A stretch of 64,000 nucleotides of DNA, taken from positions 545,670-609,669 of the forward strand of contig NIVC01000109.1 of assembly GCA_002269645.1 (NCBI GenBank), in the 5' to 3' direction. Position numbers and translations under genes: made by a program. A model generated the notes under the pieces. That model was given only the letters and a program-made list of their open reading frames with translations. It ran no database searches and had not been told where the DNA came from. Origin of the DNA: Macrostomum lignano. Taxonomy: Eukaryota. Every line of letters starts with the position of its first letter. The first letter of the stretch is position 1. Below are positions 10,576 through 64,000 of this stretch, in pieces.

Positions 10576-10616
<41 letters not shown>

Positions 10617-11335: not shown

Positions 11336-11714
11336 ATCGTTCGGTAGCTAAAAATCACCCCAATGCTTGTACCTACAAAAGAACTGCTTTGAACTTTGGC
11401 ATAAAATTCTGAATAAACAGAATACTATATCTACATAAAAAATTTCTACGCTAATATTCTACAAAACTGAAGGAGAAAAGTAAACCAATATGTATATAAG
11501 ACATTCTACGTGAATAAAATATGACATGCATAGTAACTACAACATAAATTACTGATTAAGCACAACGGGCGCTTAAGCGTCAAATTGTTGCGCTTGACGC
11601 AACATACAGAGTTGCACTTTATACGCTTCATTTTTAAAATGGACTTTTAAAAAGTACAAACAGTCACGAAAAGGATGTCGCAGCTAAATTTTTCGATTTC
11701 GAATCATGTAACTC

Positions 11715-34612: not shown

Positions 34613-37600
34613 ATGAGCGAGACAGCAAAGGGCCAGCAGCAGCAGGCAAAGACGCCTGACAAGCATCCACCGGAAGTCGAAGTGACAGCCGAAGGGGAGC
34701 TGCTATATCAGGGCTTCTATCCGGTGGTCTTGAGGTTCCTGCACCAGCGACATCCGGTCAGATCGTGGTGCCTTCGAGCCATCACATGGCCATATCCTTT
34801 CTGTCTTGTTTTTTTAGCTTGTTTGATTGCATTTTTGTTACCTATGGTGCTATTTAGGATATTTTTATCGGTCTATAAGCCTCAAAAGGATTAAGGCAGT
34901 TTAATTCAGTTGGTGTAGCGAATTAAACTGTCTTTTTTTCAGAATCGGATGCATTAACCACTGTGCTGCTCTGCCTCCTGGTTCGTGGGTCAAGTGTTTT
35001 TATGATTAAGAAAGTGATAGCATTGTTTTACAGCAGACAGTCTAAATTATTTCTCATCATTGTCAACCGTAGAGAGAACTGGACGAAAATCCCAATTTAA
35101 TTAACCTTATGATTACCAGTGGCATGCTGTGCATGCCATCGTTCATTCTGTCAATTGCTCTCAGCAGTGACAAATGAGTCATCGCTCGACTCATTGCTCG
35201 ATTCGCTGTCGAGGCCCAAGTTTCGCAAGGCTTGCTTGGCTGCTTGCCGTCGCTGTCTGACCGCTTGCATTGTAACATTTGGTAAGCTGGGGTGATGAGC
35301 TAAGGAGGCACGAGTAAAATTATGGTAGTTAATTTTTCATGTCTGTATTTTCTCTCTTTTGTCTTTTTTCTAGCTTGGCCATAGACTATTCTCCAGTCAA
35401 AGATGTCACTTCTCCTGTTGAGAAAGCGTTTTCTTGCCTGTGCATAATAAAGCAACTGTTTTGAAATTCGAAGTGTACAGCGCAGATCTAAATTGTCTAT
35501 GGCATGCACTGCTTGCCATTTGGTAAGATAGAGATGTGGGGAGGAATTCTGTCGTAGACTAGTGGTTAAAAGAGCTGTTCAACACTGCTCATCATTCTAC
35601 CCCAAGTCATTTCCTCGATGCAATTTTCAATTAAAATCCTCCCTCATAGCAGGGAAGGGCAGAAAAGTTCGTTTGGGATTTTCGCGGGAAAAAAGTGATT
35701 ATTCTTGGAATGATCACTGGGGCACTGGGGTCAAATGCCAAAGCATTGGTCAAGCAGTGAGTTCTGGAGGCATTCAAATTTTAGCGAACCGCATGGCACA
35801 CGGCTGGGAGGGTGAGGACTGAGAGAGGTGGCACGAGACGCAGTGTGGGTCGGTTGTCCCAATTTGACTTATTGGTTGGCGAGAACCGCTGCCACAGGGC
35901 AATAGTGCAGGAACAGCAACAGCAGAACGCATCCGCCTGAGAGAGACTGAGCTGAGGCCTTTGTCTTCGCCTCATGGAGTCGGGCTGAGCCCAAGGGGAT
36001 GAGGGAGCAGGGAGGGACGAGGCAAAAGGATGCTCTCTGACCCAGAGCTGCAGCAAGCAGGTTTGGGACTGGTGGCTGACCGTCACATCAAATTCCACTC
36101 CATTACCGTGGGGTCGTGAGGTCTGAGTTGGCTTGGGAAAAATGCCCAGTTTTTATTCCTCTGAGTTCCCTTCGTGTTCTCGCAACTGTTTTATGTCTTA
36201 AAATACGTTCTTCTACATGCCGACCTTGTCCACTTGTCAACTTGTGATTCCACTTGTGCCTTCCGTTTGAGAAATGAGGGGGACCTTGCATCCCTATAGC
36301 CTCCCTGTGCGTGTTGTTCTGACTGTTATCCTATTTGAGTTTTCCTCCCAATACAATCTGCTCAACCAAGTGGGCAGCAGCTTCTGCAATTAACCATTAG
36401 TAGGTTGTCAGCAGTCGGGCAGGCAAACCTCGAGATTTGAAGGAAATGAAAATTCTGCAAAGCTTTCGTTCAATTCCAATTTCGTAGCTTCTGAATGGGG
36501 TTGATTGGGAATTTCAATTTTCTTTCATTTCTGCGGCAATCTCTCCATGCAGAAGGAGTCTGCAAGAATGGATTTAATTTCATAATTTTTCTCCTCTACG
36601 TAGTTCTCAGTCGGCGATATATATAGGAAGGCTTTGGGATAGGACGTCTTATCATATTCTTGATTTCCGGGATCAAACCTCTACGTTAGCTGAGTGTTAT
36701 ATGAGGGGGGGGGGTTCACTACTGGGCCTCTTTCAGTTCAGAACCAGGCACTTGGAAAGAGGCCAGACAGGCTGGGAGAAGGGATCAGTCCCTACTGTAC
36801 TTCCTCATTTGCCCACAACGGGGCAACTGCTTTTAATTGATTTGAAAAATCGTTCTGCACATGGAATTGAGCCCATCGTGAGAGATTGAGGGGAATTCGG
36901 GGGGGGGGGGTATTAGACCGAGGATAAGGAAGCTGAGAGGCTGAGTGGCTGCTTCAGCAGTGTTGTTGCGACGCCCTACCTGTACTTGGCAACAAAATTG
37001 GCAACCCGACTGAAGTCGCATTCGAGAGTCTATCTCGGTTCCGCTTCGCTAATTTCCTTCTCTGAGGGGCCCAAGGTTATGAAGAGGAAACTGGCAACAA
37101 AGTCAAGTCTAGACTTTGGCCTGCAGCTTAGCGTTAAGCATCATCATTTAATGAATAGGGATATGGAATGAGAGAGGCTGAGAGATTAGGAAGGATAGAA
37201 GATAAGAGATGGGTGGATTGGGGTGAGAGATGGGATGGTAGAGGGTGAGAGATGAGAGGGTAGAAGGTGAGAGATGGGAGGGTAGAGGTGAGAGATGGGA
37301 TGGTAGAGGGTGAGAGATGGGATGGTAGAGGGTGAGAGATGAGAGGGTAGAGGGTAGAGGGTGAGAGATGGGAGGGTAGAGGGTGAGAGATGGGATGGTA
37401 GAGGGTGAGAGATGGGATGGTAGAGGGTGAGAGATGGGAGGGTAGAGGGTGAGAGATGGGAGGGTAGAGGGTGAGAGATGGGAGGGTAGAGGGTGAGAGA
37501 TGGGAGGGTAGAGGGTGAGAGATGGGAGGGTAGAGGGTGAGAGATGGGAGGGTAGTGGGTGAGAGATGGGAGGGTAGAGGGTGAGAGATGGGATGGTAGA

Positions 37601-40600
37601 GGGTGAGAGATGGGAGGCAGACAGAAGAGGTTGTGTCAGAAGGCCAGAAGTCTCTCCTGTATTCTCGTGAACTCAAAGCTCCGCTGTGATGATGTCACTA
37701 CTGAAATAATAGGGAGCAAGAGGATGAGCTCGTGCCGATGTAATCAAGGTGGGTGAAGATGGGATAGAATTTAAAGGAGAAAAATGTGCAATAGTGCAGC
37801 AGTCCCAGCTAGAAGCCTGTTCCGGACAACCTGAGGCGGGTGGCTGCTCAGCGCTCTCTTATGCAGCCTGAGCTGAAGCCCCTCGTTTGGCCTTTTTGCC
37901 ACCTCCGTGCCTCACGTTTGCCTCCTTCCTCCCCTCCCTACCCTTCTGCTCTGGGCAACTAATGGCTTGATGCTGCTGCAGTTCCTCCCCCTAGCCTTCG
38001 TCTCTCAGCCTCCTCCTTTTGCGCTTCATCTGTAGTCTGTCGGGCAGATCGTGTTGCAGACTCTCTCTTGCTAAATAGCTTGCATGTTTCAAAATTTGTT
38101 TTGCAAAAGCAAATGTTCCTTAACGCGTATTAAGGGCCCAGGTGTGATGATTGGTAAAAATGGTTAAATAGCAGATTCAGCAAAGGCAGGCACAGGCACC
38201 CGTCACAACCACCGGGTTGGCCGCAAAATGCCAAGCTATAAGATTGCTTCGACAACAAGCCAGTGAGTGAGAATAGAAGAACGTTGAGTCAGCCTCCCTT
38301 AGTACCTCATCCGAACTGGTATGGGAGCTGGCATTGGGATACAGACAGCAGCGAGGATGAGGGACTGAAGGGAAGCCGAGAGGCGAGGGGAGAAAGGGCT
38401 AGGAAGATAACTATAGAGAATTGGGGCTGGCAGTCAGTCACACAGTGGCAGACTGAAGGCTGAGAACAGGAGGGGGAGATGAGGTCGGGGGAAACTGCTG
38501 CTGCCAACTGCATCACGGTAGACTTCAGGAGTTCTGGGCATTGTCCCCCAGAGTCGGTGACAAAGGCAAACAGGCATATGGGAGAAAACTGAGAGAGGAT
38601 TCAGCAAAGGAAAAATATGTTTACTTGAATATACATTTATGCCATCAAATGAAATTTCACATATCACCTCATGTTGGTTTAGATGGAATCAGCGGGTGAG
38701 AAATTAATGGAGAAGGTGAGTGACACAGGGAAAATAGAGGATGAGAGTCACTCAGAGAACGGCAGGCAGATGAGGTGAGAGTCACTCAGAAAACGGCAGG
38801 CAGATGAGGTGAGAGTCACTCCAGGAACGGCAGGCAGATGAGGTGAGAGTCACTCAGAAAACGGCAGGCAGATGAGGTGAGAGTCACTCCAAGAACGGCA
38901 GGCAGATGAGATGAGAGTCACTCCAAGAACGGCAGGCAGATGAGGTGAGAGTCACTCCAAGAACGGCAGGCAGAGGAGGTGAGAGTCACTCAGAGAACGG
39001 CAGGCAGATGAGGTGAGACTGAGAGTCACTCCAAGAACGGCAGGCAGAGGAGGTGAGAGTCACTCCAAGAACGGCAGGCAGATGAGGTGAGAGTCACTCA
39101 GAGAACGGCAGGCAGATGAGGTGAGACTGAGAGTCACTCCAAGAACGGCAGGCAGATGAGATGAGAGTCACTCCAAGAACGGCAGGCAGAGGAGGTGAGA
39201 GTCACTCCGAGAACGGCAGGCAGATGAGGTGAGAGTCACTCCAAGAACGGCAGGCAGAGGAGGTGAGAGTCACTCCAAGAACGGCAGGCAGAGGAGGTGA
39301 GAGTCACTCAGAGAACGGCAGGCAGATGAGGTGAGAGTCACTCCAAGAACGGCAGGCAGAGGAGGTGAGAGTCACTCCAAGAACGGCAGGCAGAGGAGGT
39401 GAGAGTCACTCCAAGAACGGCAGGCAGATGAGGTGAGAGTCACTCCAAGAACGGCAGGCAGAGGAGGTGAGAGTCACTCCAAGAACGGCAGGCAGAGGAG
39501 GTGAGAGTCACTCCAAGAACGGCAGGCAGATGAGGTGAGAGTCACTCCGAGAACGGCAGGCAGATGAGGTGAGAGTCACTCCAAGAACGGCAGGCAGAGG
39601 AGGTGAGAGTCACTCCAAGAACGGCAGGCAGATGAGGTGAGAGTCACTTTGAGAACGGCAGGCAGATCTGGTAGCGACACACAGCAGTGGTGAAAGTTGC
39701 TAACAGGACAAGCGGAAGACACACGGCAGGACCAAAATTAGCATAAGTATCAGGCGGCAAAATGCCCCGAGGGGGGGGGGGAGGCTCGTCCCGGTTGCAG
39801 CCAAGGCTCCCCCGGTCTTGCCACTGCTTTGGGAATCAAATAAGTCCTGCTGCTCCTGACTGCGGTGCTTTTTCATTCCTTGTTTTTTTTATTTTTTTGC
39901 CTCAGCTTTCCGTCACGAAAAGCCCGCGGCAGTTCGAGGCGTGTGGAGGAAAAAAGTCGCAGTGCAAAGCAGCAGAGTTTGCGCTTTTTATTTTCAGCCT
40001 GCTTCCCCTGTTTGCATTGTTGTGGAAGTCTGGCACGCATTTTTGGTAGGTGGAATTGTTTATTATCGGCACCGGGTCACTCTGCGGACCGTCACTGGCT
40101 TTGAGAACTTTTATCGCTCGTTGGATCGCTGAAAAACTTTAATACCGCATGAGTTTTGCAATTTGGTTTGGTAATTATTGATGAAACAATTCAAGCTAAC
40201 AATTAATGATGCCGTTACCTTTCTTCTACTGGCTGACTCATTTTCTCATCACACCCATTTGTCTCTTATCTCACGTTCCTGTAACTCATCTCACCCTCCA
40301 GTCTCTAATCTCACGCTTCAGTCTCTAATCTCACCCTCTAGTCTCTAATCTCACACTCCAGTCTTTAAACTCACGCTCCAGTCTCTAATCTCACCCTCCA
40401 GTCTCTAATCTCACCCTCCAGTCTCTAATCTCACCCTCCAGTCTCTAATCTCACCCTCCAGTCTTTAAACTCACGCTCCAGTCTCTAATCTCACCCTCCA
40501 GTCTCTAATCTCACGCTCCAGTCTCTAATCTCACGCTCCAGTCTCTAATCTCACCATTCAGTCTCTAATCACACCCATTTGTCTCTTATCTCACGTTCCT

Positions 40601-43600
40601 GTAACTCATCTCACCCTCCAGTCTCTAATATAACGCTCCAGTCTCTAATCTCACCATCCAGTCTCTAATCTCACCATCCAGTCTCTAATCATACCCATTT
40701 GTCTCTTATCTCACGTTCCTGTAACTCATCTCACCCTTCAGTCTCTAATCTCACGCTTCAGTCTCTAATCTCACACTCCAGTCTCTAATCTCACTCTCCA
40801 GTCTCTAATCTCACCCCCTGTCTCTAATCTCACACTCCAGTCTCCTATCTCACACTCCAGTCTCTAATCTCACCCTCCTGTCTCTAATCTCACACTCAAG
40901 TCTTTAATCTCACACTCCAGTCTCTAATCTCACCCTCCAGTCTCTAATCTCACCCTCTAGTCTCTAATCTCACCCTCCAGACTCTAATCTCACCCTCCAG
41001 TCTCTAATCTCACACTACAGTCTCCAATCTCACACTCCAGTCTCCAATCTCACACTCCAGTCTCTAATCTCACTCTCCAGTCTCTAATCTCACCCTCCTG
41101 TCTCTAATCTCACACTCCAGTCTCTAATCTCACACTACAGTCTTTAATCTCACTCTCCTGTCTGTAATCTTTTTCCAATCTCTTATCTCATCCGATTGTC
41201 TGATCTGACCAATCTCATGCTTACGAAATTCATCTCAACATCAGTCTCTCATCTCACCTAGGAAAGAACAGATATCAAAGAGATATAACTTTGAAACTTT
41301 TTAGGATGTCAGTAAAATAGTGACAAAAATGAAGCGTTTGATTTCACTTAGAAATTTTCCTTAACCAACAAAACTTCGAAAAATGCATCTGGCTGCACTT
41401 GGTTCGAGCGAGTCAGCATCTGCGTAATTCTCATCAACTGCATCACTCTGGGCATGTACCGACCCTGCGAGGATGAGCAGTGCTCAATGACCCGCTGTCA
41501 GATCCTGTTCGGATTCGACCACGCCGTTTTTGCCTTCTTCGCAATCGAAATGCTTGTCAAAGTCGTTGCCATGGGCTTTCTTGGAAAGCTGGGCTATCTG
41601 GGAGATTCTTGGAATCGACTGGACTGCTTCATCGTTTTGGCTGGGTGAGTTGTAGCATTGCCATCTTTAATATTCGCCTGTTCCAACCTTCCAACGTTTT
41701 TAGACTGTATTGAAGGCCTGTCAACTTTTCTATGATTTAAAGGCCTGTCACACTCCTGATTTTTAAAAGCCTGTCACCCTTCACTGTTTTGAAGGCCTGT
41801 CACCCTTCACTGTTTTGAAGGCCTGTCACCATTCAGTGTTTTGAAGGCCTGTCACCATTCAGTGTTTTGAAGGCCTGTCATCCTTGACTGTTTTGAAGGC
41901 CTATCACCATTCAGTGTTTTGAAGGCCTGTCACCCTTGACTGTTTTGAAGGCCTATCACCCTTCAGTGTTTTGAAGGCCTATCACCCTTCAGTGTTTTGA
42001 AGGCCTGTCACCCTTGACTGTTTTGAAGGCCTATCACCCTTCAGTGTTTTGAAGGCCTGTCACCCTTGACTGTTTTGAAGGCCTATCACCATTCAGTGTT
42101 TTGAAGGCTTATCACCCTTCAGTGTTTTGAAGGCCTGTCACCCTTGACTGTTTTGAAGGCCTATCACCATTCAGTGTTTTGAAGGCCTATCACCATTCAG
42201 TGTTTTGAAGGCCTATCACCATTCAGTGTTTTGAAGGCCTGTCACCCTTCACTGTTTTGAAGGCCTGTCACCTTACACTGTTTTGAAGGCCTGTCACCTT
42301 ACACTGTTTTGAAGGCCTGTCACCTTACACTGTTTTGAAGGCCTGTCACCTTACACTGTTTTGAAGGCCTGTCACCTTACACTGTTTTGAAGGCCTGTCA
42401 CCATTCACTGTTTTGAAGGACTATCACCCTTCACTGTTTTGAAGGCCTGTCACCATTCACTGTTTTGAAGGCCTGTCACCCTTCACTGTTTTGAAGGCCT
42501 GTCACCCTTCACTGTTTTGAAGGCCTGTCAACTCGCCCCGCTTGATACCCGAAATTGCATCGATTCCACCCAAGCCGACTCAAACAAGAATCTACTTAGA
42601 CTTAGGCTAGCAGATTCTCGGCTCCAGTTGCCGCAGTCTTGAATAGATCAGGCAGAGCTGGAACCGGTTGTTAGGCCGAGCTCATGACTAAGGGATAAGA
42701 TCCTGGACTCGGATTCTGGTCCCCAGGGGGCTGCAAGATGAAGGTGGGGAGAGGGAGAAGGAGGCCGTTCGAGCTCGTCGGCTCATTGATAATTCAAAGA
42801 ATTGTCGCTTTTCGGCGTTACTCAAATGTCTTCGTCTCGGAGACCGTCTCAGTTCCTTCTCTTTTCCTGGCCAGCGGCTGCCCTGGCCAGCTTTGTTGAA
42901 CTGGGCTCAGGCACTTCACCTACACATTTTTAGCTCCTTTTTCTGACCCTTCATGCCCTGCATTCCTCCCTTCATCTGACCCTTCATTCCCTTCATTTCT
43001 CCCTTCATCTGACCCTTCATTTGATCCATTCCTCCCTTCATCTGATTCTTCATTTGATCCATTTCTTCCTTATATGACCCTTCCTTCCTATATTTGACCC
43101 TTCATTCCCTTCATCTAATCCTTCATTCCCTTCATCTGAACCTTCATTCCCTTTTCTGACGCTTCATTCTTTTCATCTGACCTTTCCTTTTTCTGCTGTT
43201 CTTATTAGCTTTCCTAATAGTTGAGTAATTTTATCCTGTCACTCCCCTGAACAGAACCTTGGAGTACCTGCCGCAGACCAAGGACCTGAGTCTAACAGCC
43301 ATTCGAACCATTCGCGTACTGAGGCCTCTCCGAGCCATCAACCGCATTCCAAGTGAGCTTTCTTCCATAGAAATTTACTAGTGCATACCTATCTGACTGA
43401 ATACCTGCCTAAATACCTGTCTCAGTACCTGTTTAAATATCTGTCTGAATACCTTTTTGAATACCTGTGTGAATACCTGTTTAAATACCTGTCTGAATAC
43501 GTGTCCAAACAAATGTTTAAATAATTGTCTCAATACCTTTTTGAATACCTGTCTGAATATCGTTTAAATACCTGTTCTGCATACCTTTTTAAATACCTGA

Positions 43601-46600
43601 CTGAATACCTGCTTGAATACCTGTGTGAATACCTCTGAGAATACCTGTTTAAATACCTGTTTAAATAACTGTTTAAAATATGCCTGAATGCCTGTCTGAA
43701 TACCTGTTCAAATACCTGTCGGAATACCTTTCTGAATACCTGTTTAAATACCTGACTGAATACCTGCTTGAATACCTGTGTGAATACCTGTGTTAATACC
43801 TATCTGAATGCCCGTCCGAATACCCGTTTAAATACCTGTCTGAATACCTTTTTAAATGCCCATATTGAACAATTCGCATTCACCAACACGCAGGCATGCG
43901 GATCCTGGTGATGCTGCTGCTGGACACCCTGCCAATGCTCGGCAACGTGCTGCTGCTCTGCTTCTTCGTGTTCTTTATCTTCGGCATCATCGGGGTGCAG
44001 CTGTGGAAGGGCCTCCTGCGCCACCGGTGCTACTTGGAGTCCAACTTCACCTACCCGCATCCGGGGTGAGACTGAAACTGCGCCCCAACCAAAATTCCCA
44101 ACTAAATTAGAAACTTCCATAGCTGTCTCTCCTGACTCTCATAGCTGTCTCTCCTGACTCTCATAGCTGTCTCTCCTGACTCTCATAGCTGTCTCTCCTG
44201 ACTCTCAAAGCTGCCTCTCCTGACTCTCATAGCTGTCTCTCCTGACTCTCATACTCTCGTAGCTGTCTCTCCTGACTCTCATAGCTGTCTCTCCTGACTC
44301 TCAAAGCTGCCTCTCCTGACTCTCATAGCTGTCTCTCCTGACTCTCAAAGCTGCCTCTCCTGACTCTCATAGCTGTCTCTCCTGACTCTCATAGCTGCCT
44401 CTCCTGACTCTCATAGCTGCCTCTCCTGACTCTCATAGCTGCCTCTCCTGACTCTCATAGCTGCCTCTCCTGACTCATTTAGCGGCCTTTCCTGACTCAT
44501 AGCTGTCCCTGCTGACTCTAAATAGCCCACTTATGGAGAACTTAAGTACAAAGACGGTTTCATTAAACCTAGTACCCAAGAAGCAATGTATTAACTCAGA
44601 ACATGATAATTTGTTTATTAAACTTCTGATAAACTGATAAAACCGGCTTCCAGTGAAGCGCGTCTTGGCAAGGACTAATTAAGAAGATGACGGACACTCA
44701 AGCTGTCCTACTAGAGATATCCTTGATAAACCAGCCTCCCCCTATATACCTTCCAGCATGAACCTGAGCGAGTACTACAAGCCGAACACCAGCGTTGACA
44801 CCCCGGTTGCTGCCAAAGATTTCATCTGCGCCCTGGAGGACTCCAGCGGCATCCAGACCTGCAAGAATATCAAACCCACCGTGCTCTGGCCCGACGATGG
44901 CCGCAAATATCTCAGCTGCAACCGGTCCGCTAATATGCGCGGTGACAACAAGCCTACTAATAGTAGCTGCGTTAACTGGAATCAGTACTACACTCAGTGC
45001 AGGCCCGGGTTCAGTAATCCCTACATGGGATCCATCAACTTTGACAACATCGGATTCGCCTGGGTGGCCATCTTTCAGGTTCGTCAGGATTTTTTTAAAT
45101 ATAGTCGATTGAAACTAGACTGTTTGGCAACCAATCAGACTCGAGGAGGGGTTCAGAGAGTCGCGGGGAATGAAGAATGTACAGCAATCTGAAGGCGAAA
45201 CTTCTTCAACCAATCAGACTCGAGGAGGGGGTCAGAGAGTCGCGGGGAAGGAAGAGTGTACAGCAATCTGAATGGTGAAACTTCTTCAACCAATCAGACT
45301 CGAGGAGGGGGTCAGAGAGTCGCGGGGAAGGAAGAGTGTAAAACAGACTGAAGGAGAAGCTTTGCAACAAAATCAGTAAAATAAAAATTCAAAAGCGAGA
45401 AAAACCATTTAAAATGAGCAAATAAAAAGCTTTTCATGCCAAAGCAATTAATTTTTTGTTAAACGTCTTCTAAAAACGTCTTCCACAAGCAGTGACTGGT
45501 TGTTCTTTTTGACTCTCTGTTTGGATAAAGAAAAGAGATTTTTATTGCAAGAACGATTTCGTGCAGAGAAATCTCTGGCCAGACTCCCGTCAGACATTGC
45601 GGCTTAATGAGATTTTTGTAGTCGTTGCAGAGCCAGCCGCGTGTCTGACTCAAAATCCGAGGCTACCCAGGCATTAATTTGAATAATTGCCACAACCCAG
45701 AATCATCCCCTAAGCTGAGGCGTCCGCCCGTTTTGTGTTGGAGATTTTTACTCTCAATGCTGATTAGATTAACGTTGCTGATTAGAAATAGGCATTTGTG
45801 AGCCGGAATTCGAGTCATGCTACAAAAAAAGCGATTTTATTTCAAATGATTTTGCACAATATTGAATTCGCATATAAAAGTGCAAGATCTGTCTGTGTTT
45901 TTTTTACTTTGAACAATTCAAACAAAATAGCGCGCCAATTTAATTTGTAAAATTCGTATCAGGTGATCAGTCTGGAGAGCTGGGTGGACATCATGTACTA
46001 TGTGCAGGACGCGCACTCGTTCTGGGACTGGATGTACTTTGTGGCTCTGATTGTGGTAAGTTCAGTGATCTGTTTGAACCCGAAGTTTAGGGTTGAAATC
46101 TTGCAGATTGAGCTGTCAGTGTGAGGTTGAGCGGGCGTTCACTGGGTAGATAGTGGGAGTTCACTGGTTAGATAGTGGGAGTTCACTGGGTAGATAGCGG
46201 GAGCTCACTGGGTAGATAGCGGGAGTTCACTGGTTAGATAGTGGGAGTTCACTGGTTAGATAGCGGGAGTTCACTGGGTAGATAGCGGGAGTTCACTGGT
46301 TAGATAGCGGGAGTTCACTGGGTAGATAGCGGGAGTTCACTGGGTAGATAGCGGGAGTTCACTGGTTAGATAGTGGGAGTTCACTGGGTAGATAGCGGGA
46401 GTTCACTGGTTAGATAGCGGGAGTTCACTGGGTAGATAGCGGGAGTTCACTGGTTAGATAGCGGGAGTTCACTGGGTAGATAGCGGGAGTTCACTGGGTA
46501 GATAGCGGGAGTTCACTGGTTAGATAGTGGGAGTTCACTGGGTAGATAGCGGGAGTCACTGAGTAGATAGCGGGAGTTCACAGCCAAAAGCCCGCAACTC

Positions 46601-49600
46601 TCCAGATCGGCTCGTTCTTCATGATCAACCTGTGCCTGGTTGTCATAGCAACCCAGTTCTCGGAGACCAAGCGCCGCGAAGTGGAAAAGATGATGCTGGA
46701 GCGGCAGCGCTACCAGTCCAGCTCGAGTCTGGAGAGCAGCAGGCAGCCGGGAAGCTGCTACAGTCAGATTGTCCGCCTCATCATTCGAGTCTGCAAGCGG
46801 GGCTGCCGCAGACTCTGGCATCGGTGGCGCCAGATGAGCCGCTTGAATCCGGCCAGTTCGGCCTGTCACGAGCCGGCGGCTGGGCTTCCGTTCCAGCAAC
46901 AGCGACGAGTTGCTGGTTCGGCGTCCCTGGCTCCGCCGCCCATGGCCACGCCGGAGCTGTCAGATGTCGATTCGCAGAATTCGCCTCGGCTACTGGGAGG
47001 TCGCGGTGGCGGCGGAGTGGTGAACCTCCGAGTGCTTCTGACTGCTCCATCGGGACTCGGCGAGTGTGCAGCTGGCAGCGGAAATGGCGGCGGCGTCAGC
47101 AGTCGTCGTTCGTCGTTGAACAGCTCGACGGCCGCTTGGTCGATTGCTCGAGGCTACACGGAGCGGGACCTGTTCGCCACAGGACTGTCCGGTGGTGAGT
47201 GAGCGGGACTGCTTGAGAGTGAGCGGGACTGCTTGAGAGTGAGTGGGACTGTTTGAGAGTGAGCGGGACTGTTTGAGAGTGAGCGGGACTGTTTGAGAGT
47301 GAACGGGACTACTTGAGAGTGAGCGGGACTGTTTGAGAGTGAGTGGGACTGTTTGAGAGTGAACGGGACTACTTGAGAGTGAGCGGGACTGCTTGAGAGT
47401 GAGCGGGACTACTTGAGAGTGAGTGGGACTACTTGAGAGTGAGCGGGACTGTTTGAGAGTGAACGGGACTACTTGAGAGTGAGCGGGACTGCTTGGGAGT
47501 GAGCGGGACTACTTGAGAGTGAGTGGGACTACTTGAGAGTGAGTGGGACTACTTGAGAGTGAGTGGGACTACTTGAGAGTGAGCGGGACTGCTTGAGAGT
47601 GAGTGGGACTACTTGAGAGTGAGCGGGACTGTTTGAGAGTGAGTGGGACTGTTTGAGAGTGAGCGGGACTGCTTGAGAGTGAGCGGAACTGTTTGAGAGT
47701 GAGTGGGACTGTTTGAGAGTGAGCGGGACTGCTTGAGAGTGAGCGGGACTGCTTGAGAGTGAGCGGGACTGCTTGAGAGTGAGCGGGACTGTTTGAGAGT
47801 AAGTGGGACTGTTTGAGAGTGAACGGGACTGTTTGAGAGTGAACGGGACTACTTGAGAGTGAGCGGGACTGCTTGAGAGTGAGCGGGACTACTTGAGAGT
47901 GAGTGGGACTACTTGAGAGTGAGTGGGACTGTTTGAGAGTGAGTGGGACTACTTGAGAGTGAGCGGGACTGCTTGAGAGTGAGTGGGACTACTTGAGAGT
48001 GAGCGGGACTGTTTGAGAGTGAGCGGGACTGCTTGAGAGTGAGCGGGACTGCTTGAGAGTGAGTGGGACTACTTGAGAGTGAGCGGGACTGCTTGAGAGT
48101 GAGCGGGACTACTTGAGAGTGAGCGGGACTGCTTTGATTTTGCGTGCTACACTTGAGCAAATCCTCCGGAAAGAATGAGTTTTAAAACTTACTATTGTGT
48201 GTCTCACTGTTGTTTTTCGGTCAGCAAAAAGCATGGAGTCATCTCACAAGTTGGAAACCCAGTGATCGGGCACTGTATGAAGGGCGGCAATCGTTGATAT
48301 GAAGAGCGGACTGACACAGTGTCTGAACTGAGATATGACCGGTAGGCAGGGGAGCCATCAGCTGAAGGTCTCGTAAGTCAATCATCCTGGCAGCTCAGTG
48401 CGGTCCCGCCGTCTTAGGCTAAGGGCTGGTGAATATTTCATACGGCTACAGGGCCGCACGCCATCTCTTACTGAGTCCATCCCAGCCTCCGCTCATCATC
48501 CTTTTCTCTCCTCGCAGCGCGAGTGAAAAAAAATAAGGCGAAGGCTGGGCTGGCTGCAACAAGCTGCTGAGCCACCCTCAGTGAGATCGATTTACAAATA
48601 AACACCTCAGCGGCTCTGGGCTCTTTGGTCGCAAATGTGCTCAACCTGCTCTGGTCTCGGGCTTCTTTGAGCTGCTTAATTTCTGGGGCGGCTTTCGCCC
48701 ACTTTCCAGCGCGTCATTCTTTAACGATCGTCTTTCGCTCAGGGTAAACGGTTTGTTTGAAGGACCGGCCTACTGCACTGGTGCCGTGAGAAAGTTCAAA
48801 GCCACCTGTGTCAATATTCCAGTTCATACATTCAAAGTGTGGCCTGACCACAGATACTGAGTAGTATATTTGGCCTGACCACAGATACTGAGTAGTATAT
48901 TTGGCCTGACCACAGATACTGAGTAGTATATTTGGCCTGACCACAGATACTGAGTAGTATATTTGGCCTGACCACAGATACTGAGTAGTATATTTGGCCT
49001 GACCACAGATACTGAGTAGTATATTTGGCCTGACCACAGATACTGAGTAGTATATTTGGCCTGACCACAGATACTGAGTAGTATATTTGGCCTGACCGCT
49101 GTGTCCTTTGTGTTGCTTAATTGATTCTTATTTATAATTTTAATTCACAAATAGTGAACGCAAGGCTTTAGTTGTAATTACATAATACATAATATTGAAC
49201 TACATAATATAGAGCTACATAGAAGTAGAAAGATCACTAACCAAGTAAGTATAAGTGCATTTGCATTAATAAAAGAAGCTTCATGTCGAAGTTAGGAGAT
49301 TCATTTGGGAATCCCTACGATGTCGAGGCTTGCAGGGAATCGCTATAATGCTGTAGTGCTACAATGACTCTTGGAGAGAATCACTGAAATGTCAATGCTT
49401 TAGGGTTAGGGCTAGGGTTAGAAGGTTGAAAGATTTTTTAGATTTCAAGGCTTATTGGGGGCATCGCTGAGATGTCAAGGGGGGGTAAGTTGATATGTTG
49501 AAGCTTGTGGGGGGGGGAATCACTGACATGTCAAGGCTTACAAGGGACTGCTGAGGTATATTGCAAAGAGATGCTACATGTAGTTATTACAAAACTTGTA

Positions 49601-52600
49601 CTGCATTTTTGGCTCCCCAACGCTAAGATACTAAGCTAAAAATACTACTAGTGCTTCACAAACTTATGCAGATGTCAGGCTGTAGGGTTAGTGTTAGGGT
49701 TGGTGTTAGGGTTTAGGTTTAGGGTTAGGTTCAGGGTTATATCGTTAAGATTCGGGTTAGGGCTAGGGTTAGGGTAGCTTATAACTTAGCTCATGTAGCT
49801 TATTAAAAATGTTTATCATGGAAGCATCATGCAAAAATAATGGAAGCGTCATATGAAAAATCATGGAAGCGTCATGTAAAAAATAATGGAAGCGTCATGC
49901 AAAAAAATCATAGAAGCATCATGCAAAAACTTATGGACAAATATTAAATTTAGGGTTATGGTGAGGGTTAGGGTTAGGGTTAGAAGTTTGACAGGATATT
50001 TTTTTAAGATTTCAAGGCTACATGTAGCTTATTAAAAAACGTGTATTGCATTTCTTTGGCCCCCCAACGGGGGGCGTAGATTGCTAGTACAATGCTAAAA
50101 CATTAGATGGGTCGGCAGGGGGTTGTGTGCACCCTGGCGCACTTCAAGCGACATTGTCACACAACCTGTGAGAGGCATTACTGCCCATTCCGCCGACTCC
50201 CCTGAGCAGGCACACAAGCGCGCGGATACGTACGCAGGCACACACTCACACAGGAGTGTACAGCGGCCCTAACTTTATTTTATCGTTAGGCATGTACACT
50301 TCACTGTGCCTTGGGGCTGGCCCTCAAGGCCGTTAATTGCACGAGCAGAGCCAAGCTGATTCCGATTTAGCCCCAAATTAATGTGACTGCACTTGGAATC
50401 GAGCCTGGGACGATGGAACATCGGAGCACCGCACTGGACCACTTAGGCTAAGCTCTTTGAAAATAAGCACAAATAAGCTCTGCACACAGATTGATGATGA
50501 CCATGGACAGCGTTTTCCATATCGGATTATGCCCGTTTCTTTTTAAAGCAACTTCTAAGTTTCAAGGGCTGCTAGCGTGCTATATGTTGGTTTATCGCAT
50601 GAGAAAAGAAGACGTTGTATAACTTTACTCATTTCTGGATGATGAACTTGCTGTCATGCAGAAGAGCAGCAAGCTGACGACGACTGGCTGAGGTCGGGAA
50701 CGCCCGGCTCCAACAAACCGGCCGCTCCATCGATATGGTCCTGCTGGTCAGTTTCAGGTTAGTCCGATCGCCCAGTTCTTATATCGCGGATATTGTTCTG
50801 ACAATCCACATTTCCAACCCTAAAAAATCAACCAGCTGTGACCGATGTCTTCCACCGAATCCGAGACTCAATTCAGAGACTTGTTGAGCACAGATTTTTC
50901 CAACGTGGCATCCTGTTGGCCATTCTAATCAATACATTCAGTATGGGCATCGAGTACCACGACCAGGTATTGTTGAACCTATAAACCTTCCTAAATAGTA
51001 AATTTACGTGAGGAAAAAACGTAAGTTACACAACCTCAAATTCTGGATTTATTTCAGCCAAAGCAGCTGACTGAGTTCATTGAGTACAGCAATTTGGTGT
51101 TTTGCGTTGTGTTCGCGCTTGAAATGTTGCTTAAGCTGGTTGGTGAAGGATTCTTCAATTACATCAGCAGCGGCTTCAACGTTTTCGATGCCAGCATCGT
51201 CATTCTAAGGTAACGTCATTTCACAACCTAAAAATGTCATTCCAAATTGGGTGCTGTGAAATTTGATAAGAGACTTCGAGATTTTGGTTAGCCCGACGAT
51301 GCAAAAGTCAGGGGCAGATATTGGCACCCTGGCTTGTTTTCGAGTGTGACCAGACTGATTCACATTAAAACTGAGCGATTACTCAATCTGAAAGTCCCTC
51401 ATCATTGCAGCATTTTCGAGCTCATCCAAGATGGCAACAGCGGATTATCTGTACTGCGCACATTCCGCCTGCTCCGCATACTCAAACTAGTCAGGTTCCT
51501 GCCAGCGCTCCGCCAGCAGCTGTTCGTCATGATCAAGACCATGGACAACGTGGCCACATTCTTCGCTCTGTTGGTGCTCTTCATCTTCATTTTTAGGTAG
51601 GCCTTCTTTGCGGTCAGGGAAGCTGATCGAATGGTCCTTGACCTAAAAAGTCACTGGTCCAAGCTGCTCATTAACCAAAAACGGCGAAAAACTATACGAC
51701 TCAAAACTTCCTGTAGACTTAACTGAACAGTTTCTCATGATTAGTCGTCGGGAATCGAGTATATTTAACTTCAAACTGTATAGGATTCAAACTTCAATCA
51801 AGTTAATCAATTTACGACCCAAAAAGCAAAGCTGTCTTTATTCCAAATTAAACCGTCGATGAGTTACTGAAGTACACTGCATGTAGGCTATCGATGACTC
51901 ATTAAGTTATCAAAGATCCACGCTAAGCTTTTGACGACTCACACCAATGGTCGCATCCAATCCAGTAGCTCTAATCCGATAGCGGTGTACAAGTGTGTGT
52001 GTTGCCAGTACATGCAGGAACGGTCGGTCGGGTGATTCCAAAAGTTCAAGCTCGCAAGTATGGTCCAAACAACTGTCTCCAATGACTCTAAACCCTCCTT
52101 GAAAAATGTGCCCGACCCGCAGCGTGCTGGGCATGACTCTTTTCGGCGGCAAATTCTGCTGGCACCCAGACGGCAGCACCTGCAGCTGCAGCGAGCGAGC
52201 CGATCCCAACAGCGACTGCACCTGCGACCGGGCCAACTTTGACACCATCATGTGGTCTCTGGTCACCGTGTTTCAGGTGAGCAACGACGTCTTTTCATTT
52301 AACGCGATCAAACTAAAAGACGTTCTTTAAGTAGAGAACGTTACTAGAGCATAGAGAACACATCTTCAGTTCGCTATCAAAACCAGTGCCTCGAGACCAA
52401 AATTTCGCATACCCGACTTTATTGCAAAGCATTGCAACCTCCTAGCTTAGCTACTATTAGTAAGGGGTTCCTCCAATCTGATCCTTCATTGAAAGATTTA
52501 TTGAAACCTTAACAAATGCAGGTTCTGACCCAGGAGGACTGGAACATTGTGCTCTACAACGGCATGGCCAGAACTTCGTCTTGGGCAGCTTTGTACTTCA

Positions 52601-55600
52601 TCGCCCTCATGACGTTCGGAAACTACGTGCTGTTTAATCTGCTGGTTGCCATCCTTGTGGAGGGATTTTCTAGCGAGGTGAGTCCAGGAGAATTTCTGCA
52701 GGATTTGAGTGCATCCACTAGGCAGACTGCAATGGCGTGCTACTCTGAGCTACTCTCTGGTAGAATTATTTATAGTTAGCCTCTGTTGATATCGTTTGCC
52801 TTTTGTTGCATTTTTAACAAAACTCGTCTGTTGCTAGCGGAGAAAGTCGCTATTATTTTTATTTCAATTCAATCCGGGGAATCGTCGTTTCCTTTGTTTG
52901 ATCGACTGTCTGGTAGATTTTGTCTTTTTTTGCAAGAGCACTCTAGAGTGAAAACAAGGACTGCTCAAGTAACATATATATAGGACGCAACACTCGAAAT
53001 TTATGGTAAATGTTTTGAAGGCAATTTTCGCCGAAAAATACACTGCAGAGATAGGAGGTTTTAATTTTTCAGCACAAAAATTGTTATTGCTTTTGATAGG
53101 AGGCAGATTCAGTGTTTAGCTCATTGCTTTGAAATTCTTCCAGTACCTAAAGATAAATAGTTTGTCAAGAAAATATTTTAAATAAATAATTCCACCCAAA
53201 ATTCGAAACGTGACTTTGCGCAGAGAAAGTACTATATTATGGAAAAATACCGGCTTCGCCAGGTAAAACGATCATATTTTTGGCTTCAGTCTGTAGATCC
53301 CTGATCGTAGATTTCGTTAGTTCTGCCGCTTAAATTTTGCCTTGTTGTAGCTGCTGTTTTGGTTTTCGTTGACAATTTTGCAGGCGTAAAATGCAGACTT
53401 ATTAAGTCGCGCATTGACACTTGTAGCAGCGTTTCTGAGTCAAATCCCGAGCTGTCAATCAACCAATGCTTTGGACAAAAGAGTATTCTAATGCCTCACT
53501 GAAGCACGTTATAGACTGTAGTTGCGACCTCGTCCTTGTCTATATTCCTATTGTCTGCATTCCCTTACTTTTAGTTTAACCTGGAGTGATCATTTGAGTT
53601 TTATTTGAGCATAACACGCGCAATAAAAATTAACAATGCAAGCAACTGTTTAGAAAAGTCAGACATTCATTACCATTGTAGAGAACTTAGTCCAGCGCAC
53701 TCTCGCTGCACCAATCCAGTTTTACTACGGTAGATTTCAAAATCATCCATTCTGCACAGTTTTATCTGGAAAGGAAAATTTTCCTGAGTTCACCGGAAAT
53801 TGACAGGGTCATCTCAATTAAGCTTTGATATACTGTCTGAGTGCGTGAGCAGCAGTGGGCAATTCAGCATAGAAAGCGCGCCTCACTTCCAGAAGGGCGG
53901 CTCAATTAAGGGATCTCAGAAAGAGTCCACGGAGTTCGACACCGACGACAGCTGCAAGACTTCGAACGACGGCGGCGCCGGCCTGGCGTCAATATCGACG
54001 TCGGCGCTGGGAAAAATCCCCGGCTTTGGAACGCGACGAGCGACGGATCCGAAGGCGAGCGGGAATAATCCACCTGGGAAAGGTGATCTCGACCTTTCAT
54101 AACTTTCTTCTATTATACCTTATTCCTAACTGTGAAGGTTGGGGGTTCGATTCCCGATCCCACTGGAACAATTTGTGTCCTTGAGCAAGACACTTAACTC
54201 TGCATTGCTTCAGTCCACCCAGCTGTAAAATGGGTGCCAGCATTAGCTGGGGTAATTGAGGGTGTGCATGGCGACCCCCAGTCCTTGGACTGAACAGCCG
54301 TAAGCAGCCTTCAGATGCGCCGCGCAATAGCTGCGGCTGAGCTGTCGGTTGCACACCTGGCCATTAGGGCAGGTGTATTCAAATATTAGTATTATCGTAT
54401 TATGATTACGACGTAGTAACTAGGAAAATCACCACTTTGAGCAGCTTTTATTGAGTTTAGAGAAAAGCTTTAAAAGCGCATTTGGATTACTTTTCCTTGA
54501 TTCAATAAGCCATTAAAAAGGAAAATGTTAAATTAATTCGCAAATCGAAAGAAAAATGCCAGAACTTACTCCGCAATCCGTGATCAATTTCCCAGGTGGG
54601 AAGTCGCCAGTCGGAGCACCTCGCAGTCTGCATCTTCAACCGAGTCCCCACCTGCAGCAGCAGCAGCAGCAGCAGCACTGCCTCTACCTGGATTGCGCGA
54701 GAGGCCTGGTGCCGCCCATCATCACGCACACGGCGGCGACTCCTCAGACGACGCCGCAAGGCAGCCCGGCAGCCAACGAGCTGCCAATGCAACCGCAGCC
54801 GCAGCAGCAGCCTCTGTGCGATCCGAGACCCTTTCAGTGCAGCTCATCCAGCATCGAGACAATCGACAGATCGCTGACTGTAAGCCGCAGGCGGTGTTCT
54901 CTGAAATAACTTCAAATAAGAATCCAAACAACACGTCAGTCAGTAATCGTATCTGCAAACTCCAACACTCTCCCAGAATGAAAGGTCCAGCCTGCAGTCT
55001 ACGCGAGCCAATCAGAGAGCTCAGACAGGCATTGCGGATGCTGGACATTGCGCATTCCCAAACAGCGCCATCTGCAACGGATCCGCCATAGCGGCGGCGG
55101 CGGGGGCGGCCCACCACAGCGCCAGGAACATCAACGGCCGGATCTTCCGCGCGCCGACGCCGCCAAACCCGACCGGGCCAGCCGGTCCGCCGACGGCAGC
55201 CGGCAGCTTCAGCAGCAACCGGTCGCAGCCCGGCAGCCGGCGGTCGCATCGAAGCTGTGCGGCGATCCGGCCGCAGACTGTCGATGAGGTGGCAGCAAAG
55301 GAAGCCAAGTCGAGCTGCTGCAGCTCGGATGAGCTGGCTCTTGTGAGCTGGAAAATCTCTGACTATATTTGTGAAAATGCGCACAAATGATTACTTAAAT
55401 TCTTTAACGCCCTTCTTTCAGAAATCGAATTGGTTTGAAAAAGTTTTCTTCTCTAGAGAAAACTACGCGCTGTACGTCTTTGCACCGGACAATCCGTGAG
55501 TCCGTTTTACCCGCGGAGAACTTTGTAATGATGTAATACTATCCATGAGAGGTTGGAGTGAGGTGGGTGTTTCATAAGAGATTGGAGTGAGGTGGGTGTT

Positions 55601-62512: not shown

Positions 62513-62547
62513 GTGAGTGAGAATTGGCATCAAGGTTATTTCCAGCA

Positions 62548-64000
62548 ACACTATTATCGACACTATTAACCGAAACTATTACCGACACTATTAGCCGACA
62601 CTATTAGCCAACACTATTAACCGACACTATTACCGACACTATTAACCGACACTATTAACTGACACTATTAACCGACACTATTAACCGACACTTTTACCAA
62701 CACTATTAACCGACACTATTAACCGACACTATTAACCGACACTATTAACCGACACTATTACCGACACTATTACCGACACTATTACCGACACTATTACCGA
62801 CACTATTAACCGACACTATTACCGACACTATTAACCGACACTATTAACCGACACTATTAACCGACACTATTAACCGACACTATTACCGACACTATTACCG
62901 ACACTATTAACCGACACTATTACCGACACTATTAACCGACACTATTAACCGACACTATTACCGACACTATTACCGACGCTATTAACCGACACTATTAACC
63001 GACACTATTACCAACACTATTAACCGACACTATTAACCGACACTATTAACTGACACTATTAACCGACACTATTAACCGACACTTTTACCAACACTATTAA
63101 CCGACACTATTAACCGACACTATTACCAACACTATTAACCGACACTATTAACCGACACTATTAACTGACACTATTAACCGACACTATTAACCGACACTTT
63201 TACCAACACTATTAACCGACACTATTAACCGACACTATTACCGACACTATTACCGACACTATTAACCGACACTATTACCGACACTATTACCGACACTATT
63301 ACCAACACTATTAACCGACACTATTAACCGACACTATTACCGACACTATTACCGACACTATTAACCGACACTATTACCGACACTATTAACCGACACTATT
63401 AACCGACACTATTACCGACACTATTACCGACGCTATTAACCGACACTATTAACCGACACTATTACCAACACTATTAACCGACACTATTACCGACACTATT
63501 AACCGACACTATTAACCGACACTATTACCGACACTATTAACCGACACTATTACCGACACTATTAACCGACACTATTACCGACACTATAACCGACACTATT
63601 AGCCGACACTATTAACCGACACTATTAACCGACACTATTAGCCGACACTATTAGCCGACACTATTACCGACACTATTAACCGACACTATTAACCGACACT
63701 ATTAACCGACACTATTACCGACACTATAACCGACACTATTAGCCGACACTATTAACCGACACTATTAACCGACACTATTAACCGACACTATTAACCGACA
63801 CTATTAACCGACACTATTAGCCGACACTATTAACCGACACTATTAGCCGACACTATTAACCGACACTATTAGCCGACACTATTACCGACACTATTAACCG
63901 ACACTATTAACCGACACTATTAACCGACACTATTACCGACACTATAACCGACACTATTAGCCGACACTATTAACCGACACTATTAACCGACACTATTAAC
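62548..64000. repeat. 12/13-bp minisatellite (a)ccgacactatta, running off the window
   Basis: More than 100 copies downstream of the last visible Cav3 exon. Confidence 0.98.

What the first reader, a model, noticed from the sequence alone, without database searches (positions are those of the whole stretch)
34792..41398. 6.6-kb U12-type AT-AC intron in Cav3, implying a working minor spliceosome
Seen in sequence: a 5' site ATATCCTTT, a branch site TTCCTTAAC and a terminal AC join TGG CC|T TGG TTC GAG to restore the conserved pre-IS1 sequence. Established knowledge: voltage-gated Na and Ca channel alpha-subunit genes carry ancient minor introns near the start of domain I, and several invertebrate lineages have lost the minor spliceosome. 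The branch site is ~33 nt from the 3' end, further than the usual 10-20 nt. The intron also contains three minisatellites, two of them rich in GTGAG decoy donors. Standard GT-AG gene predictors would miss or truncate the N-terminus. If the host is a flatworm, this bears on when minor splicing was lost in that phylum (inference).
Basis: partly seen in the sequence, partly recalled or inferred. Interest (0 to 1): 0.7.

Follow-up and report, generated by a model that had tools for sequence, protein, structure and literature searches.

The report
Conserved minor-type intron in flatworm Cav3
The first intron of a T-type calcium-channel gene from a Macrostomum flatworm is a textbook AT-AC "minor" (U12-type) intron at the position where nearly all animal sodium and calcium channel genes carry one, so it is a real but expected feature; its one oddity is an unusually long gap between branch site and 3' end.

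Summary
Exon 1 (34613-34791) ends TGG CC| and is followed by ATATCCTTT. TTCCTTAAC lies at 41357-41365, and AC at 41397-98 precedes T TGG TTC GAG. Of 5580 in-frame, stop-free joins, this AT-AC join scores best against a Cav3 profile. The best GT-AG join is 14 bits worse.

Orthologous introns in a scorpion, a crinoid and seven metagenome eukaryotes have the same phase, the same branch motif and a YAC or TAA end. Published work already describes this domain-I S1 U12 intron as conserved across Nav and Cav channels, Cav3 included.

The gene is Cav3: its pore loops read EEDD and its best matches are human Cav3.1-3.3. The host is a Macrostomum flatworm, with 85-87% identity to M. lignano proteins and a shared repeat family.

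Flatworms are already known to keep minor snRNAs (Schistosoma, Schmidtea), so the finding does not bear on a loss of minor splicing in the phylum.

One point is open. The branch A lies 34 nt from the distal AC, against 10-17 nt in 11 orthologues, and an in-frame AC sits at the canonical 10-11 nt. Using it would add 8 residues. RNA data are needed to decide.

Verdict: a new member of a known kind, of low to moderate interest.

The parts
34613..34791 (+). Exon 1 of the Cav3 gene (coding from ATG 34613; ends TGG CC, phase 2 inside a Pro codon)
   Evidence: Translation. The segment [26 protein letters not shown] aligns with the conserved pre-IS1 segment of Cav3 homologues and of human Cav3.1. An in-frame TGA lies at 34595.
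34792..34800 (+). U12-type AT-AC 5' splice site ATATCCTTT (9/9 consensus)
   Evidence: The same CC|ATATCCTTT is found in Centruroides and in metagenome locus L092.
34792..41398 (+). Intron 1, 6607 nt, U12-type AT-AC (3' end at 41398 if the distal AC is used, 41374 if the proximal AC is used)
   Evidence: Junction scan. No gene-like ORF lies inside the intron.
37173..37617 (+). Minisatellite 1, 22-bp unit AGAGGGTGAGAGATGGGAGGGT, about 20 copies, with 18 GTGAG; G-rich
38737..39667 (+). Minisatellite 2, 34-bp unit with AGGTGAGAGT, 27 copies, with 24 strong U2-type donor look-alikes
40261..41170 (+). Minisatellite 3, 20-bp unit GTCTCTAATCTCACCCTCCA, about 45 copies; partly the reverse complement of minisatellite 1
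41357..41365 (+). U12 branch-point sequence TTCCTTAAC (9/9 consensus; branch A at 41363 or 41364)
   Evidence: The motif is identical in 11 orthologous introns.
41373..41374 (+). Proximal AC, 10-11 nt from the branch A. It is a candidate alternative 3' splice site, is in frame, and would add SKNASGCT before WFER.
   Evidence: (200.6 bits against 214.3). The spacing matches the orthologues.
41397..41398 (+). Distal AC (CAC|T). This 3' splice site restores ...ITWP|WFER...
   Evidence: Top profile score among 5580 joins. The same YAC|N TGG architecture occurs in the orthologues.
41399..41644 (+). Exon 2 (IS1-IS2), ending GG|GTGAGT
   Evidence: The Pfam Ion_trans match starts at the exon 2 boundary.
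43255..62600 (+). Rest of the Cav3 gene (domains I-IV). Resolved exons: 43255-43352, 43894-44065, 44757-45078, 45963-46055, 46606-?, ?-50966, 51058-51209, 51411-51596, 52123-52276, 52522-?, ?-56154, 57352-57861, 58467-58748, 59369-59521, 60053-60293, 61410-61559, 61655-~61950. All resolved introns are GT-AG.
   Evidence: The exon boundaries in the I-II and II-III linkers were not resolved.

Best explanation
Positions 34792-41398 are the first coding intron of a T-type (Cav3) calcium-channel alpha-1 gene of a Macrostomum flatworm, and the intron is U12-type of the AT-AC subclass.

It is the orthologue of the ancient minor intron that interrupts the codon just before domain-I segment S1 in nearly all metazoan Nav and Cav genes.

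Inferred mechanism: the U11/U12 di-snRNP recognises /ATATCCTTT and TTCCTTAAC cooperatively. The branch A (41363/41364) attacks the 5' site. Exon 1 is then ligated to exon 2 at the AC|T at 41398/41399, giving ...[17 protein letters not shown]... The intron is insulated from about 42 U2-type GTGAG look-alikes in its own minisatellites, because its 3' end has no polypyrimidine tract or AG and so offers nothing for the major spliceosome to pair them with.

Shown here: the motifs, their placement, the orthology of position and phase, and the Cav3 identity.

Inferred: that the host's minor spliceosome removes the intron, and that the distal AC is the main acceptor despite its 34-nt spacing. I put the intron being U12-type at about 0.9. 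The confidence figure below is for the full statement including the distal acceptor.
For: - Motifs and coordinates were read directly.
- The AT-AC join 34791|41399 and its three sequence-equivalent slides have the highest profile-HMM score of 5580 possible in-frame joins, at 214.3 bits. The best GT-AG or GC-AG join scores 200.4 bits (rank 633), and no nearby donor resembles GTRAGT.
- The join is collinear with 18 homologues and with human Cav3.1. The spacing RxWCL-x6-WFER is invariant in about 70 genuine Cav3 proteins; the deviating sequences look like mis-modelled junctions.
- Orthologous introns have the same phase. Centruroides has AAT CC|ATATCCTTTT...TTTCCTTAAC-N11-AA|A TGG. Anneissia (two copies) has TTTCCTTAAC-N11-AC|A TGG. 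Seven metagenome eukaryote loci end YAC|N TGG TTY GAR. L092 also has the CC|ATATCCTTTC donor.
- The literature describes the D1S1 U12 (AT-AC) site as conserved in almost all Nav and Cav channels including Cav3 (PMC6259924).
- All other resolved introns of the gene are ordinary GT-AG.
- In a nematode, a phylum in which the C. elegans lineage lacks U12 splicing (PMC2846911), the intron is simply absent (Aphelenchoides).
- The gene is intact, with EEDD pore loops, and best matches Cav3.1-3.3 at about 1e-200. The intron must therefore be removed.
- Flatworms have minor snRNAs (PMC2770079; PMC6312358; PMC10639083).
Against: - The branch A to 3' end distance is 34-35 nt. The optimum for U12 introns is 11-13 nt (PMC3584512).
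- From memory, not re-read here: Dietrich et al. 2001 (MCB 21:1942) found that spacings above about 20 nt activate nearer cryptic sites, and that the U12 spliceosome does not scan for distal sites.
- A proximal in-frame AC exists at exactly the canonical spacing.
- No hairpin shortens the distance (z = -0.17).
- No transcript, snRNA or minor-spliceosome protein evidence from the host could be obtained.
Confidence: 0.55

Rival explanations
1. This is the same U12-type AT-AC intron, but the minor spliceosome uses the proximal AC (41373-74), 10-11 nt from the branch A. The intron is then 34792-41374 (6583 nt) and the channel carries a lineage-specific 8-residue insert (SKNASGCT) between ...ITWP and WFER. 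The proximal AC might be the sole acceptor or an alternative one.
For: - The proximal AC sits at the spacing seen in all orthologues (10-17 nt, mostly 10-12) and close to the published 11-13-nt optimum (PMC3584512).
- The 24 nt between the two ACs are in frame and stop-free.
- The M. lignano paralogue model A0A1I8J4J1 reads ...ISLTPSATKKTVGRQMPVT-WFER. This is consistent with a BPS (A-TTTCCTTAAC = 'ISLT') about 46 nt from its distal AC, with an in-frame ACN 13 nt after the branch A. The same two-site layout may therefore exist in a second Macrostomum Cav3 gene. This is inferred from the protein only.
- U12 3' splice-site choice is described as error-prone (PMC3584512).
Against: - The join scores 13.7 bits worse against the Cav3 profile (rank 582).
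- No genuine Cav3 among about 70 has any insertion at this site.
- The proximal site is AAC, with a purine at -3, whereas the orthologues use YAC or TAA.
- The putative insert peptides of the two Macrostomum genes (SKNASGCT against KKTVGRQMPVT) share almost nothing, although the flanking poorly conserved N-terminus is recognisably similar. That looks more like intron than like coding sequence.
- The distal CAC|T TGG retains the ancestral acceptor architecture exactly.
Confidence: 0.33
2. The motifs are coincidental and the intron is removed by the major spliceosome at a GT-AG pair. One example is GFYP|GT (donor at 34724) joined to the AG at 41350-51, which is the kind of join the M. lignano gene model uses.
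For: - A GT follows codon GFYP (ccg|GTGGTC) and an AG lies at 41350-51, with an open frame into exon 2.
- An automated M. lignano model has this form.
Against: - Such a join deletes the conserved [11 protein letters not shown] segment, which is encoded intact at 34757-34791 and is nearly invariant across phyla.
- The best GT-AG or GC-AG join is 14 bits below the AT-AC join.
- No donor nearby resembles GTRAGT, and there is no polypyrimidine tract before the AG.
- The chance of perfect 9/9 U12 donor and branch motifs at these positions is about 1e-8 to 1e-7.
Confidence: 0.03
3. Exon 1 is not joined to exon 2 at all. Possible reasons are that exon 2 is reached from another promoter or by spliced-leader trans-splicing, that the locus is a decaying pseudogene, or that the junction is an assembly artefact.
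For: From my own knowledge, M. lignano uses SL trans-splicing. An AG lies at 41350-51. No RNA evidence is available.
Against: - Without exon 1 the first in-frame Met lies inside S1.
- Exon 1 encodes the conserved pre-IS1 motif in the correct phase.
- About 20 downstream exons are open, are 85-87% identical to M. lignano proteins, and keep EEDD.
Confidence: 0.04

Closest known systems
The conserved D1S1 U12-type (AT-AC) intron of metazoan voltage-gated Na+ and Ca2+ channel alpha-subunit genes (Nav1, Nav2, Cav1, Cav2, Cav3), as described by Fux et al. 2018 (PMC6259924), which cites Spafford et al. 1999. Wu & Krainer 1999 also described it (cited from memory).
   Same: - The position is the same, just before S1 of domain I.
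- The phase is the same, after the second base of the Pro codon in (N/S/W)P|WFER.
- The donor is ATATCCTTT, the branch motif is TTCCTTAAC, and the end is YAC.
   Different: - The branch site to 3' end spacing is 34 nt instead of 10-17 nt.
- A second in-frame AC sits at the canonical spacing.
- The intron is long (6.6 kb), and one third of it is minisatellite.
Macrostomum lignano Cav3 genes: A0A1I8J4J1 (P0325) for domain I, and BOX15_Mlig001512g4 (P0076), A0A1I8GKA7 and A0A1I8IAU4 for domains III-IV
   Same: - Identity is 70% over domain I (78% in exon 2) and 85-87% over domains III-IV.
- The window shares a ~310-bp interspersed repeat with M. lignano contig NIVC01001798.1.
- The P0325 model suggests the same intron, also with a distant branch motif (inferred).
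   Different: - None is identical to the window's gene, so the window holds a paralogue or a congener's orthologue.
- The M. lignano models lack or mis-join the conserved exon-1 end.
- DNA of their domain-I region could not be fetched.
Human CACNA1G/H/I (Cav3.1-3.3; PDB 6KZO, 9AYG, 7WLI)
   Same: - These are the best sequence matches, at E about 1e-195 to 1e-203 over domain I.
- RSWCLRxxxxPWFER aligns without a gap.
- The selectivity filter is EEDD.
   Different: Identity is about 55-65%. The vertebrate introns were not examined here; their U12 status is taken from the literature (PMC6259924).

Membership tests
U12-type (minor) intron, AT-AC subclass | 5' splice site matching /RTATCCTTT | tested here: met
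   ATATCCTTT at 34792-34800, 9/9.
U12-type (minor) intron, AT-AC subclass | Branch-point sequence TTCCTTRAY near the 3' end (scoring windows -40..-5 in SpliceRack and -55..-5 in intronIC) | tested here: met
   TTCCTTAAC at 41357-41365, which is -42..-34 from the last intron base. The windows are taken from PMC2846911 and PMC7367187. No formal PWM or intronIC score was computed.
U12-type (minor) intron, AT-AC subclass | Short branch site to 3' splice site spacing (optimum 11-13 nt, usually 10-20) | tested here: inconclusive
   The spacing is 34-35 nt to the distal AC (not met) and 10-11 nt to the proximal in-frame AC (met). Orthologues have 10-17 nt. The optimum is taken from PMC3584512.
U12-type (minor) intron, AT-AC subclass | No polypyrimidine tract; terminal AC (or AA/AG) | tested here: met
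   The last 33 nt, CAACAAAACTTCGAAAAATGCATCTGGCTGCAC, are A-rich and end CAC.
U12-type (minor) intron, AT-AC subclass | Orthologous in position and phase to established U12 introns | tested here: met
   and PMC6259924.
U12-type (minor) intron, AT-AC subclass | Actually excised by the U11/U12-U4atac/U6atac spliceosome; minor snRNAs and specific proteins present in the host | not testable with these tools
   No host genome or transcriptome was accessible. Rfam found no snRNA in the 64-kb window, which is as expected. Other flatworms do have the snRNAs.
Cav3 (T-type) voltage-gated calcium channel alpha-1 subunit | Four-domain channel with closest similarity to Cav3 rather than Cav1, Cav2 or Nav | tested here: met
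   Cav3.1, 3.2 and 3.3 match at E 1e-203 to 1e-195, against 1e-85 for Cav1. Named homologues are T-type. Domains I-IV are all encoded between 34.6 and 62.6 kb.
Cav3 (T-type) voltage-gated calcium channel alpha-1 subunit | EEDD selectivity-filter residues in the four pore loops (the EEDD rule is from my own knowledge) | tested here: met
   The pore loops read DI ISLESW, DII LTQEDW, DIII SSKDGW and DIV ATGDNW.

The most novel reading that the evidence does not exclude
The Macrostomum minor spliceosome routinely uses 3' splice sites 34-46 nt downstream of the branch point. That is well beyond the roughly 10-20-nt window established in vertebrate systems and seen in every orthologue examined here, and it happens even though a nearer in-frame AC is available. 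This would mean a lineage-specific relaxation of the distance rule for U12 3' splice-site selection. The mirror-image reading is that a shift of the 3' splice site has inserted 8-11 residues at an otherwise invariant spot just before IS1 in Macrostomum T-type channels.
Probability: 0.45. Interest if true: 0.4.

Novelty: new member of a known kind. Interest (0 to 1): 0.22.

Why it matters
There are three practical consequences.

- **Annotation.** GT-AG-only gene models of this channel lose or garble the N-terminus. This is seen in the M. lignano UniProt model and in models from a crinoid, a tunicate and many fishes. Read-through peptides such as 'PYPF' or 'xT-WFER' flag such errors.
- **Phylogeny.** The finding adds Macrostomorpha, an early-branching rhabditophoran lineage, to the flatworms with evidence of minor splicing. 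This is consistent with what is already known for schistosomes and planarians, so it does not change the picture of minor-spliceosome loss.
- **Splicing mechanism.** The one potentially informative point is the 34-nt spacing with a competing canonical-distance AC. It is a natural test case for how strictly U12 3' splice sites are chosen by distance.

Tried and rejected
- **GT-AG or GC-AG alternatives.** All in-frame joins within about 100 nt of either end were enumerated. Every one scored at least 14 bits worse, and none has a consensus donor.
- **A second branch site near 41398.** None resembles TCCTTAAC.
- **A hairpin bringing the distal AC closer.** None was found.
- **Other U12 introns in the gene.** The other ATATCCTT copies on the + strand do not mark 5' splice sites: 31463 lies in a repeat and 44717 lies 40 nt upstream of the exon 5 acceptor.
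- **Minor snRNA genes in the window.** None was found.
- **Orthologous Macrostomum DNA.** The M. lignano contig stretch reachable with P0076 covers only domains II-IV. No Macrostomum protein with domain I was returned by the indexed searches. P0325 is not on record for contig look-up.
- **Identifying the window's own contig.** The exon-1 read-through ORF is not on record.
- **Minor-intron data for Macrostomum.** The supplement held for Larue & Roy 2023 contains no entry for Macrostomum.
- **Primary papers on spacing.** Dietrich 2001 and Levine & Durbin 2001 are not held.
- **U12 motifs in the M. lignano locus.** The only matches lie in repeat copies.
- **Genes inside the intron.** There are none.

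Full report
**1. The observation**

- An ORF starts at ATG 34613, preceded by an in-frame TGA at 34595, and runs to ...ACA TGG CC at 34791.
- The next nine bases, 34792-34800, are ATATCCTTT.
- TTCCTTAAC lies at 41357-41365.
- The bases at 41397-98 are AC, and T TGG TTC GAG follows from 41399.
- The interval is 6607 nt.

Tandem Repeats Finder confirms three minisatellites: 37173-37617 (22-bp unit), 38737-39667 (34-bp unit) and 40261-41170 (20-bp unit). Together they make up 35% of the intron. The first two contain 18 and 24 copies of GTGAG, against 8 in the other 4.3 kb.

Taken alone, the two splice motifs occur at chance frequency in the 64-kb window. Their placement is what is significant. 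From the shuffle expectations, a perfect donor motif exactly where protein homology stops, together with a perfect branch motif within 55 nt of where it resumes, has a probability of about 1e-8 to 1e-7.

**2. Is this the splice junction?**

I enumerated every join of a base in 34700-34894 to a base in 41300-41439 that keeps the frame open. There are 5580 such joins. Each product was scored against a profile HMM built from 18 Cav3 homologues, with the query excluded.
- The AT-AC join 34791|41399 scores highest at 214.3 bits. It ties only with three slides that yield the identical mRNA.
- The best GT-AG or GC-AG join scores 200.4 bits (rank 633), and no nearby GT resembles GTRAGT.
- The joined protein...[25 protein letters not shown]..., aligns without a gap to homologues from arthropods, nematodes, fishes and a tunicate and to human Cav3.1.
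- Across 449 collected proteins, the spacing between RxWCL and WFER is six residues in 70 sequences. Nearly all exceptions look like junction mis-modelling. Examples are 'xT-WFER', which is read-through of AC|N, and 'NPYPF', which is read-through of CC|ATATCCTTT.

**3. Orthologous introns**

| Source | Donor | 3' region |
|---|---|---|
| Scorpion Centruroides | AAT CC\|ATATCCTTTT | TTTCCTTAAC-N11-AA\|A TGG TTT GAA (AT-AA) |
| Crinoid Anneissia, two copies | not examined | TTTCCTTAAC-N11-AC\|A TGG |
| Seven metagenome eukaryote loci | CC\|ATATCCTTTC in L092, 324 nt upstream | each ends YAC\|N TGG |

AT-AA, the form seen in Centruroides, is the commonest non-canonical minor-intron form (PMC10639083).

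The metagenome loci came from one scan for TCCTTAAC-N(8-38)-TGGTTYGARMG. It returned 120 stretches, of which seven encode a genuine Cav3 exon 2.

Position and phase are therefore identical across phyla. This agrees with Fux et al. 2018 (PMC6259924). They describe the D1S1 site as a U12-type AT-AC junction conserved in almost all Nav and Cav channels, Cav3 included.

Two lineages make a useful contrast. In the nematode Aphelenchoides the intron is simply absent. It is also absent in an unidentified metagenome eukaryote.

**4. The gene and the host**

All four channel domains are encoded between 34.6 and about 62.6 kb on the + strand.
- The pore loops read E, E, D, D.
- The best solved-structure matches are human Cav3.1, 3.2 and 3.3 (E 1e-203 to 1e-195), against 1e-85 for Cav1.
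- Every other intron I could resolve is GT-AG with a GTGAG- or GTAAG-type donor.

The closest proteins are from Macrostomum lignano: 85-87% identity over domains III-IV and 70% over domain I (A0A1I8J4J1). The window also shares a ~310-bp interspersed repeat with an M. lignano contig at 83-92% identity. No protein identical to the window's gene is in the databases searched.

**5. What it implies**

The gene is intact and conserved, so the intron must be removed. With perfect U12 signals and no usable U2 signals, the minor spliceosome is the obvious agent. That is an inference, because I could not search the host genome or its transcripts.

The implication is not surprising.
- The planarian Schmidtea expresses U4atac and U6atac, with homologues in Clonorchis and Echinostoma (PMC6312358).

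No loss of minor splicing in flatworms is known, so the finding does not date one.

**6. The open point: which 3' splice site?**

The branch A is 34-35 nt from the distal AC. An AC at 41373-74 lies 10-11 nt from the branch A. It is in frame and would add SKNASGCT before WFER.

For the distal site:
- The profile score is 13.7 bits higher.
- The six-residue spacing is invariant in genuine Cav3 proteins.
- The CAC|T TGG acceptor architecture is preserved.
- The proximal site has a purine at -3.

For the proximal site:
- It obeys the distance rule.
- U12 3' splice-site choice is known to be distance-driven and error-prone.

No hairpin shortens the gap.

The M. lignano model A0A1I8J4J1 reads GFYP-ISLTPSATKKTVGRQMPVT-WFER. 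'ISLT' fits A-TTTCCTTAAC, and the Thr before W fits AC|N. This suggests a branch motif about 46 nt from the distal AC in a second Macrostomum Cav3 gene, again with an in-frame ACN at 13 nt. The inference rests on protein sequence only. The two 'insert' peptides are dissimilar, which looks more like intron than like coding sequence.

My estimates are about 0.55 for the distal acceptor, 0.33 for the proximal acceptor (alone or as an alternative), and the remainder for other explanations.

**7. Verdict**

This is a genuine, well-supported U12-type AT-AC intron. It is a new species instance of a well-described ancient intron. Its significance for flatworm minor-spliceosome evolution was overstated. 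The atypical spacing of the 3' splice site is a modest curiosity worth one RT-PCR.

Noticed in passing
window 7306-9217, 9972-10745, 11698-12260, 41704-42530, 43393-43849, 44118-44519, 46130-46581, 47197-48134, 55544-55915, 56186-57317, 58018-58451, 58963-59292, 60381-61067, 61960-62334, 62548-64000: Almost every intron of the Cav3 gene, and the upstream intergenic DNA, carries a long minisatellite (periods 9-45 bp, up to 1.9 kb) or an (AGAC)n tract. The arrays in intron 1 are therefore a genome-wide habit, not something specific to the U12 intron.
   Followed up: partly
window 37173-37617 versus 40261-41170: Minisatellites 1 and 3 of intron 1 are partly reverse-complementary (71-82% over 28-42 nt, in many registers). 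In the pre-mRNA they could pair and loop out about 3 kb of the intron. Array 1 is also rich in GGG runs (45 of them).
   Followed up: partly
window 33012-33319, 50114-50451, 61133-61323; L001 400-714, 13986-14296, 19952-20309: A ~310-bp interspersed repeat is present three times in the window and three times in M. lignano contig NIVC01001798.1, at 83-92% identity. It is probably a SINE- or MITE-like family of the genus. ARAGORN found no tRNA in the window.
   Followed up: no
window 2400-4200, both strands: A GC-rich block holds long overlapping ORFs. The 293-aa ORF at 3292-4170 has a sub-threshold reverse-transcriptase match (RVT_1, 27.7 bits against a cut-off of 29.6). It is probably a decayed retrotransposon.
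   Followed up: partly
P0325 (UniRef100_A0A1I8J4J1, M. lignano); P0241 (Anneissia); P0048 (Ciona savignyi H2YFL7); fish models: Public gene models mis-handle this U12 junction. They read through the donor ('NPYPF'), read through the acceptor ('xT-WFER'), start inside exon 2, or substitute a GT-AG join that deletes RxWCLxxITxP. Many database representatives begin exactly at exon 2.
   Followed up: partly
L126 (Aphelenchoides avenae), L003/L004 (metagenome eukaryote): The D1S1 intron is absent in these Cav3 genes, where ...NPWFDR... and ...SPWFER... are contiguous. This is the outcome expected where minor introns have been purged.
   Followed up: partly
window 44717-44724: Another ATATCCTT lies on the coding strand, 40 nt upstream of the exon 5 acceptor (44757). 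It is inside intron 4 and not at an exon end, so it is a chance match.
   Followed up: yes
window 46884-50900 and 52690-56010: The I-II and II-III cytoplasmic linkers of the channel could not be modelled for lack of guide homology. Open frames at 46567-47199 and 54537-55390 may hold linker exons.
   Followed up: no
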